DNA of 64,000 nucleotides from Octopus sinensis (taxonomy: Eukaryota), in the NCBI RefSeq assembly GCF_006345805.1, contig NC_043000.1:5518001-5582000 (forward strand). Direction: 5' to 3'. Below the pieces are notes generated by a model. It made no database searches. It had not been told where the DNA came from and saw nothing but the letters and a program-made list of their open reading frames with translations. Numbering within the stretch: position 1 is the first letter of the stretch; each line of letters opens with the position of its first letter. Shown one piece after another: positions 26,379-26,571 of this stretch. A program made the translations under genes and the position numbers.

Positions 26379-26497
26379 GCTTACTGTCATATCACGTTGA
26401 ATGCACCGGTTGTTGTCCAATTACCGAAGTTATGCAACATCGACCCTAGTGAGTACTTAGATGGGTCACCGGTTGGGAAACTTAGGTGGTGTAAGCA
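26379..26497 (+). pseudogene. Degenerate full-length 5S rRNA copy
   Basis: 119 nt; GTTGAATGCACCGGTT, CCGAAGTTA.GCAAC and AGTACTT.GATGGGT.ACC 5S landmarks; terminal helix GCTTAC/GTAAGC. Confidence 0.88.
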
Positions 26498-26571
26498 TTC
26501 TCACACTTTTCCCTGGCGGTGCTCCAGAATGGCCACAGCTCTAAGTCTGAAACATATAAATGAATAAAAGA
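26379..26571 (+). mobile_element. 5S-headed retroposon (candidate SINE3 or 5S-LINE chimera)
   Basis: The 5S copy is followed after about 16 nt by TGGCGGTGCTCCAGAATGGCCACAGC, 23/26 identical to the LINE 3' end at 3966-3991, then an A-rich tail. Confidence 0.72.

What the first reader, a model, noticed from the sequence alone, without database searches (positions are those of the whole stretch)
26379..26571. Full-length 5S rRNA head on the CR1-group LINE tail: candidate SINE3 or 5S-LINE chimera
A complete 119-nt 5S copy is joined through TTCTCACACTTTTCCC to a tail 23/26 identical to the LINE 3' end at 3966-3991, then CTGAAAC and an A-rich end. 5S-derived SINEs are known from zebrafish and some other animals (established); I am not aware of one in octopus. 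The TTTT in the linker could be a native 5S terminator, which would favour a template-switch chimera like U6-L1.
Basis: partly seen in the sequence, partly recalled or inferred. Interest (0 to 1): 0.7.

Follow-up and report, generated by a model that had tools for sequence, protein, structure and literature searches.

The report
5S rRNA copy fused to LINE tail
An old, decayed full-length copy of 5S ribosomal RNA is joined to the short 3' signal that an octopod jumping gene (a LINE) uses to copy RNA back into DNA; this is the known build of a 5S-derived SINE, but I could not test whether it ever multiplied.

Summary
Rfam finds one full-length 5S rRNA at 26379-26497 (68 bits, E 3e-12). A 16-nt spacer (26498-26513, with TTTT at 26507-26510) joins it to a 3' module at 26514-26576.

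That module has two stems, then AAAC, then 8-bp A-rich repeats. The same module ends:
- the frameshifted LINE at 1477-4011;
- at least 7 copies of an abundant tRNA-type SINE in the window;
- a related LINE in Argonauta hians.

A profile built without this tail still finds it (E 1e-10).

The unit starts at 5S base 1, has no poly(A) after the 5S part, and carries the complete module. One retroposition event is therefore much more likely than two chance neighbours.

The 5S head is decayed: 5 broken pairs and no better fold than shuffled sequence. It is a relic, not a gene.

Whether it belongs to an amplified 5S-headed SINE family or is a one-off template-switch chimera could not be tested. No octopus genome was reachable and the window holds a single copy. 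I lean slightly to a family (about 0.45 against 0.38).

Either way it is a known kind of element. No 5S-derived SINE of octopus turned up in the papers searched.

The parts
26379..26497 (+). Full-length 5S rRNA-derived head of 119 nt, decayed. It starts at 5S position 1.
   Evidence: Rfam 5S_rRNA, 68.1 bits, model 1-120, with 5 non-canonical pairs marked. It is 66% identical to human 5S. Promoter elements against human: box A 10/15, IE 5/6, box C 13/18. The RNA fold is no better than shuffles, z = +0.44.
26498..26513 (+). Spacer TTCTCACACTTTTCCC, with TTTT at 26507-26510. It is either a 5S 3' trailer with its pol III terminator, or family-specific body sequence.
   Evidence: Read directly. It has no convincing match to the LINE or to SINE sequence upstream of the module. 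ORFs over 5S genes of other animals suggest first T-runs roughly 5-12 nt after the 5S end (my back-translation; codons ambiguous).
26514..26535 (+). First half of the shared 3' module, TGGCGGTGCTCCAGAATGGCCA. Stem 1 pairs 26515-26520 with 26529-26534.
   Evidence: Alignment of 12 tails. Consensus structure from 9 of them. Leave-one-out profile hit at E 1e-10.
26536..26553 (+). Hairpin 2, CAGC-TCTAAG-TCTG, followed by AAAC. The pair 26539/26546 is a C.U mismatch in this copy.
   Evidence: This stem covaries: CAGC/GCTG in the LINE, CAGTC/GACTG in the SINEs, CAGCC/GGCTG in Argonauta. One column pair changes on both sides in 3 of 9 sequences.
26554..26576 (+). 3' end of 8-bp repeats: AT, ATAAATGA, ATAAAAGA, ATGAG.
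   Evidence: It aligns with (GTAAAAGA)n of the SINE copies and with the repeats ending the LINE. A hairpin plus an 8-bp microsatellite is the described CR1 3' signature (PMC5729268).
1477..4011 (+). 5'-truncated, frameshifted LINE copy (RT ORFs). Its short 3' UTR ends in the same module at 3966-4011.
   Evidence: ORFs. Pfam RVT_1. Best relatives are octopod: Argonauta hians at 53-58%. Tail alignment.
6927..7399 (-). Copy of the abundant tRNA-type SINE (internal TA/TG microsatellite) ending in the same module.
10020..10420 (-). Second copy of the same SINE with the same tail. Further copies lie at 27207-27821(-), 22102-22622(+), 24654-25136(+), 14216-14455(+) and 17646-17726(+).
29424..29492 (-). 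Tail-only fragment, 5'-truncated inside the module, of the LINE type. Its hairpin CAGC-TCATAG-GCTG is the closest to that of the 5S element.

Best explanation
Positions 26379-26576 are one retroposed unit: a complete 5S rRNA sequence, a 16-nt spacer, and the complete 3' recognition module of an octopod CR1-like LINE.

Origin (inferred). The composite arose when the LINE reverse transcriptase, having started on the 3' module of a LINE or SINE RNA, switched template to a 5S transcript.

Amplification (inferred, my slight preference). The product then behaved as a minimal 5S-headed SINE of the SINE3 type:
- RNA polymerase III starts at 5S position 1 from the internal box A / IE / box C promoter.
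- The transcript carries the LINE module.
- The LINE enzyme binds the hairpins, primes on the 8-bp repeats and copies the RNA to its 5' end.

This particular copy is an old, mutated, inactive daughter.

What is shown: the three-part anatomy, the shared and conserved module, the presence of a LINE carrying the same tail in the window, and the decay of this copy.

What is inferred: a single insertion event (about 0.9) and amplification as a family (about 0.45 overall).
For: Full-length head. 5S begins at model position 1, so an RNA was copied to its 5' end.

No separate 5S tail. No poly(A) or other tail follows the 5S part. The only priming signal is the module 16 nt downstream.

Complete module. 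It is present from its 5' boundary, the point where SINE-LINE similarity also begins, through both stems and the 8-bp repeats.

The module is a real functional unit:
- It ends a LINE, at least 7 SINE copies and an Argonauta LINE.
- One stem pair covaries.

Distinct tail variant. It has SINE-like GGCGGTGCT together with a LINE-like CAGC hairpin, and equals no other tail in the window.

Shared 5' junction. The 5' end abuts (TA)n, as at several SINE copies.

Chance adjacency is unlikely. I estimate about 5e-4 from roughly 3 truncated tails per 64 kb.

Precedents:
- CR1-mobilised SINEs gain new heads by template switching (PMC5729268).
- SINE3 arose independently many times (PMC10886601).
- The giant squid genome has about 24,000 5S-derived loci, 'likely SINEs' (PMC6962438).

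Base rate. One copy in a randomly drawn 64 kb would imply about 1,000 or more copies in a 2.3-2.8 Gb genome (lower 95% Poisson bound). This holds only if the window was not selected for this feature.
Against: - There is only one copy in 64 kb, against at least 7 copies of the tRNA-type SINE.
- TTTT at 26507-26510 lies between head and tail. It would stop polymerase III before the tail, so this copy cannot be a source gene.
- If the TTTT is ancestral, the element was dead on arrival.
- No target-site duplication can be shown.
- The promoter boxes and the 5S fold are decayed.
- No copy number, consensus or second junction could be obtained.
- The translated-ORF searches found no other junction, but octopus DNA is not in those collections.
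Confidence: 0.45

Rival explanations
1. One-off template-switch chimera, like U6/L1 and 5S/L1 insertions in primates. During one retroposition event the LINE enzyme copied the 3' module of a LINE or SINE RNA. It then jumped to the 3' end of a 5S primary transcript that still carried its 13-nt trailer and U-run. The product never propagated.
For: - The spacer ends in TTTT, where a polymerase III transcript of a 5S gene could end, and the module follows 3 nt later.
- Some 5S genes of other animals appear to have their first T-run about 5-12 nt after the 5S end (back-translated).
- The head is a complete small RNA in sense orientation 5' of a LINE 3' end, the U6/L1 pattern (bioRxiv 10.1101/2025.02.02.635956).
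- There is a single copy in the window.
Against: - The switch would have had to fall within a few bases of the 5' edge of the module.
- In primates, 5S/L1 chimeras are mostly antisense and truncated (same preprint), unlike this one.
- T-runs of 4 or more arise by decay at the equivalent place in old SINE copies, at 17646 and 14369. The TTTT is therefore weak evidence.
- Sporadic chimeras number tens to hundreds per genome, so meeting one in a random 64 kb is improbable (below 1%).
Confidence: 0.38
2. Two independent events: a 5S pseudogene or orphon, and next to it a separately inserted 5'-truncated LINE or SINE tail. Both were perhaps drawn to the same TA/CA microsatellite.
For: - Tails are dense, about 12 per 64 kb, and tail-only fragments exist, for example at 29424-29492.
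- Insertions of this system cluster at (TA)n.
- No duplication brackets the whole unit.
Against: - A 5S retrocopy made on its own would need its own 3' priming tail, and none lies between 26497 and 26514.
- The two parts have the same orientation, only 16 nt apart, with the module intact from its first base.
- I estimate the chance at about 5e-4 per 5S locus.
- No duplication brackets the tail alone or the 5S alone either.
Confidence: 0.07
3. A working, dispersed 5S rRNA gene that happens to lie next to a repeat.
For: The match is full length and above Rfam's gathering score.
Against: - Five non-canonical pairs.
- The fold is no better than shuffles, z = +0.44.
- Changes in boxes A and C.
- It is not in a tandem array.
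Confidence: 0.01

Closest known systems
SINE3: 5S rRNA-derived SINEs (zebrafish SINE3, fruit-bat and lepidopteran families such as HaSE3)
   Same: - A 5S-derived head that would supply an internal type 1 polymerase III promoter.
- A 3' tail shared with a LINE present in the same genome, which would mobilise it.
- SINE3 families arose independently many times (PMC10886601).
   Different: - There is no body or Deu-type central domain, only a 16-nt spacer.
- A TTTT lies between head and tail.
- Copy number is unknown; SINEBase asks for at least 100 (PMC3531059).
- I found no published octopus family. The described octopus SINEs OK, OR1 and OR2 are tRNA-derived (cited in PMC4758252 and PMC4824008).
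PittSINE and TguSINE1 of passerine birds (CR1-mobilised SINEs, with a head acquired by template switching)
   Same: - The tail is a hairpin plus an 8-bp microsatellite, as at a CR1-type LINE 3' end.
- A new head would be acquired by a template switch from an existing SINE or LINE RNA to a small RNA (PMC5729268).
   Different: - The head here is 5S rRNA, not tRNA.
- The host is an octopod.
- Amplification is not shown.
U6/L1 and 5S/L1 chimeric insertions of primates
   Same: A small polymerase III RNA is fused 5' of a LINE 3' end in a single event. U6 is full length and in sense orientation, as 5S is here (bioRxiv 10.1101/2025.02.02.635956).
   Different: - Those involve L1 with poly(A) and clear duplications.
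- Their 5S parts are mostly antisense and truncated.
- The LINE part is of variable length, rather than exactly the recognition module.

Membership tests
SINE (SINEBase definition, PMC3531059) | Short (under 1 kb), interspersed, not tandem | tested here: met
   The element is 193-198 nt, with a single dispersed copy and no tandem 5S.
SINE (SINEBase definition, PMC3531059) | At least 60% identity to tRNA, 5S or 7SL RNA over at least 60 nt | tested here: met
   66% identity to human 5S over 119 nt. Rfam 68 bits.
SINE (SINEBase definition, PMC3531059) | [quoted passage not shown] | not testable with these tools
   One copy in the window. No octopus genome is in any searchable collection.
SINE (SINEBase definition, PMC3531059) | Extra sequence absent from the cellular RNA, which separates a SINE from a plain RNA pseudogene | tested here: met
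   A 16-nt spacer plus a module of about 60 nt follow the 5S part.
SINE3 (5S-headed SINE) | 3' tail shared with a LINE present in the same genome | tested here: met
   36/44 identical to the LINE end at 3966-4011. The module is conserved in the Argonauta LINE.
SINE3 (5S-headed SINE) | Intact internal promoter (box A, IE, box C) | tested here: inconclusive
   10/15, 5/6 and 13/18 against human 5S. No octopus 5S reference was available, and the copy is decayed.
SINE3 (5S-headed SINE) | Transcript can reach the tail, with no polymerase III terminator between head and tail | tested here: not met
   TTTT at 26507-26510 in this copy. It could be a later mutation, as in the SINE copies at 17646 and 14369.
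SINE3 (5S-headed SINE) | Target-site duplication around the whole unit | tested here: inconclusive
   Only ACATATA (26370-26376 and 26552-26558) was found, and it lies inside the tail in TA-rich DNA. The flanks are microsatellites.
Template-switch chimeric retrocopy (U6/L1 type) | Complete small RNA, in sense orientation, 5' of a LINE 3' end | tested here: met
Template-switch chimeric retrocopy (U6/L1 type) | Junction at the true 3' end of the small RNA transcript | tested here: inconclusive
   The spacer ends in TTTT, 13 nt after the 5S end. The native 3' flank of octopus 5S genes could not be obtained.
Template-switch chimeric retrocopy (U6/L1 type) | Unique junction, with no propagation | not testable with these tools
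   This needs a genome-wide search.
CR1-group LINE (the LINE that shares the tail) | 3' hairpin followed by short (8-bp) repeats | tested here: met
   The signature is described in PMC5729268.
CR1-group LINE (the LINE that shares the tail) | Placement of the reverse transcriptase within the CR1 clade on a tree | not tested
   Only Pfam RVT_1 in the window copy. APE domains (PF03372, PF14529) are seen in relatives.
Functional 5S rRNA gene | Conserved secondary structure | tested here: not met
   5 non-canonical pairs. z = +0.44.

The most novel reading that the evidence does not exclude
The copy is a relic of an undescribed 5S-headed SINE family of octopods. That would be the first characterised SINE3 in cephalopods. 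It would be unusually minimal, with a head joined almost directly to the LINE recognition module and no body. It would have been born by a head swap from the dominant tRNA-type SINE or from its CR1-like LINE.
Probability: 0.45. Interest if true: 0.45.

Novelty: new member of a known kind. Interest (0 to 1): 0.3.

Why it matters
- If it is a family, it adds a fourth independent small-RNA head to the octopus SINE repertoire. It would be a clean, minimal case of SINE birth by template switching on a CR1-type tail.
- It would also help explain the very large numbers of 5S-like loci reported in cephalopod genomes.
- If it is a one-off, it shows that stringent, tail-recognising LINEs of invertebrates also make U6/L1-style chimeras.
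- In practice, it warns annotators that Rfam 5S hits in octopod genomes can be retroposon relics.
- The analysis also defines the conserved 3' module of this LINE/SINE system: two stems, AAAC, then short repeats.

Tried and rejected
- Translated the element. One frame is open across head, spacer and tail (62 aa). The word-indexed protein search found no candidate.
- The exhaustive HMMER search with the same 62 aa gave 44 hits. All those inspected were ORFs over 5S rDNA of other organisms. None continued into the tail. Their sources carry no names, and a look-up of one of them found nothing on record.
- Tried to sample octopus DNA through proteins. The LINE ORF finds only Argonauta hians and fragmentary assemblies. 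The abundant-repeat ORF finds one 543-nt contig. About 56 kb of the fetched loci (43 kb of it Argonauta) holds no 5S.
- Scanned for a pattern running from 5S box C to the tail. The metagenome scan gave 4 contigs, all the same unrelated locus with a partial 5S-like stretch and a chance ATGGCCACAG. The genome-contig scan gave 0.
- Ran control scans with the abundant SINE tail, which also gave 0. Absence in those collections therefore means nothing.
- The permissive Rfam scan gave only microsatellite noise besides the 5S.
- Looked for a paralogous empty site in the window. The flanks 25734-26378 and 26577-27186 have no second copy.
- Searched for a target-site duplication and found nothing credible.
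- Considered whether the spacer derives from LINE or SINE sequence upstream of the module. By eye on the alignment only about 5-6 of 10-15 positions match, so I rejected it as unsupported.
- Searched papers for an octopus or cephalopod 5S SINE and found none. The 1983 octopus 5S rRNA paper and the 2015 octopus genome paper are not held.

Full report
WHAT IS THERE

Rfam finds one family above its gathering score in the 64 kb. It is a full-length 5S rRNA at 26379-26497 on the + strand: model positions 1-120, 68.1 bits, E 3.3e-12. The permissive scan adds only microsatellite noise.

The 5S part is followed by TTCTCACACTTTTCCC (26498-26513). Then comes TGGCGGTGCTCCAGAATGGCCACAGCTCTAAGTCTGAAAC, and then ATATAAATGAATAAAAGAATGAG, ending at 26576.

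THE TAIL IS A SHARED, CONSERVED MODULE

The core ATGGCCACAGC (one mismatch allowed) occurs 6 times in the window against 0.83 expected. A profile search finds about 12 tails in the window. They belong to three kinds of element:

- A 5'-truncated, frameshifted LINE at 1477-4011. Its ORFs match Pfam RVT_1. Its 3' UTR is little more than this module.
- At least 7 copies of a very abundant SINE with a tRNA-like head and an internal TA/TG microsatellite.
- A tail-only fragment at 29424-29492.

The closest relatives of the LINE protein are from the octopod Argonauta hians, at 53-58% identity. The Argonauta element ends in GGGCGGTGCCCCAGCATGGCCCCAGCC-GGCAAT-GGCTGAAAC followed by (ATACAAG)n.

The consensus structure has two stems. 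The second stem changes on both sides while keeping the pair: CAGC/GCTG in the LINE, CAGTC/GACTG in the SINEs, CAGCC/GGCTG in Argonauta.

Hairpin(s) followed by a short 8-bp repeat are the described 3' signature of CR1-type LINEs and of the SINEs they move (PMC5729268).

A profile built without the 5S-linked tail still finds 26509-26572 at E 1e-10. This tail is 82% identical to the LINE tail over 44 nt and 69-79% to the SINE tails. It combines SINE-like and LINE-like character states, so it equals none of the others.

STATE OF THE 5S HEAD

- It is 66% identical to human 5S. Against human, box A matches 10/15, IE 5/6 and box C 13/18.
- Five pairs are non-canonical.
- The whole element folds no better than shuffled sequence, z = +0.44.

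It is a relic, not a gene.

ONE EVENT OR TWO

- The 5S begins at position 1, which is the mark of an RNA copied to its 5' end.
- Nothing that could prime reverse transcription follows the 5S part, apart from the module 16 nt downstream.
- The module is complete from the point where SINE-LINE similarity begins.
- Both parts have the same orientation.

With about three truncated tails per 64 kb, I estimate the chance of such a neighbour at about 5e-4 per 5S locus.

The 5' junction abuts (TA)n, as at several SINE copies.

No target-site duplication can be shown. The flanks are (CA)n/(TA)n upstream and (TG)n downstream. The only repeat found, ACATATA, lies inside the tail.

I put a single composite insertion at about 0.9.

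FAMILY OR ONE-OFF

I could not reach one.

- The protein collections lack octopus. The window's own most abundant repeat ORF finds a single 543-nt contig.
- The open frame across the element finds nothing that continues into the tail.
- The junction-pattern scans found only an unrelated locus or nothing.
- Control scans with the abundant SINE tail show that these collections hold no octopus DNA.
- Forty-three kb of Argonauta sequence holds no 5S.

For a one-off chimera:
- The spacer ends in TTTT, where a 5S primary transcript could end.
- The T-run would block polymerase III from reaching the tail.
- 5S genes of some other animals appear to have their first T-run about 5-12 nt after the gene (back-translated).

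Against giving the TTTT much weight: T-runs of 4 or more arose by decay at the equivalent place in two old SINE copies, at 17646 and 14369.

For a family:
- The minimal SINE architecture.
- The distinct tail variant.
- Precedents for head acquisition by template switching on CR1 tails (PMC5729268).
- Repeated independent births of SINE3 (PMC10886601).
- About 24,000 5S-derived loci in the giant squid (PMC6962438).
- The base rate. One copy in a random 64 kb implies roughly 1,000 or more copies in a 2.3-2.8 Gb genome (genome sizes from PMC10700109). This holds only if the window was not chosen for this feature.

I settle at family 0.45, one-off 0.38, two events 0.07 and working gene 0.01.

COMPARISON WITH WHAT IS KNOWN

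By architecture the element is SINE3-like. It meets the SINEBase criteria for length, identity to 5S and extra sequence (PMC3531059). The copy-number criterion is untestable here.

This copy fails the requirement of having no terminator before the tail.

It also fits the U6/L1 chimera pattern, although primate 5S/L1 chimeras are mostly antisense and truncated (bioRxiv 10.1101/2025.02.02.635956).

The octopus SINEs cited in the papers I read (OK, OR1, OR2) are tRNA-derived (cited in PMC4758252 and PMC4824008). I found no report of a 5S-derived one.

The organism is inferred to be an octopod only from the LINE relatives. I could not confirm the species.

VERDICT

The element is an ordinary type of mobile-element relic. 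It has modest novelty if a family exists.

Noticed in passing
window 6927-7399(-), 10020-10420(-), 27207-27821(-), 22102-22622(+), 24654-25136(+), 14216-14455(+), 17646-17726(+): A very abundant SINE, about one copy per 7-9 kb. It has a tRNA-like head, an internal (TA)n(TG)n microsatellite, and the same 3' module as the LINE at 1477-4011. Two tail subtypes exist, with and without an extra AAAATTCTTCA before GGCGG.
   Followed up: partly
window 5955-6185, 6440-6677, 12681-12908, 13971-14198, 16396-17010, 41891-42132, 50128-50548, 55268-55357 and others: A second abundant short repeat with at least 10 copies at 87-93% identity. It carries a spurious open frame (TQRGQTRTDKGIKSI...). It is often dimeric or nested.
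   Followed up: partly
window 11637-12959 and 12926-14249: A tandem duplication of about 1.29 kb at 99.1% identity. It is young compared with the surrounding repeats.
   Followed up: partly
window 26287-26378 and 26577-26715: The 5S element sits between microsatellites in mirror arrangement: (TA)n...(CA)n upstream and (TG)n...(TA)n downstream. I cannot say whether this is chance, a target preference, or growth from the insertion.
   Followed up: partly
window 56800-60200, and 35000-37000: Pieces of other LINE families. Reverse-transcriptase ORFs lie on the - strand at 57088-58246. An endonuclease-like ORF lies on the + strand at 58959-59768. A LINE C-terminal region with a CPRCG zinc-knuckle-like motif lies near 36378-36884.
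   Followed up: no
window 20943-21179(-), 43285-43581(+): Mariner-type transposase fragments (PDIAPSDFHLFRSLQNSLNGKNF...).
   Followed up: no
window 25153-25733 and 60496-61061(-): Two copies of an unclassified repeat, 82% identical. One of them ends about 650 nt upstream of the 5S element.
   Followed up: no
L001-L004 (JGI contigs Ga0126326/29/33/34), e.g. L002 1241-1326(-): The same locus recovered from four related metagenome samples. It carries a partial 5S-like stretch (…GGGTTAGTACTTGGATGGGTGAACG…) that does not reach Rfam's 5S threshold. It is unrelated to the octopod tail.
   Followed up: partly
L006 12379-12452(+) and 595-673(-): Argonauta hians carries the same LINE 3' module, followed by a 7-bp repeat (ATACAAG)n instead of the 8-bp repeat seen here.
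   Followed up: partly
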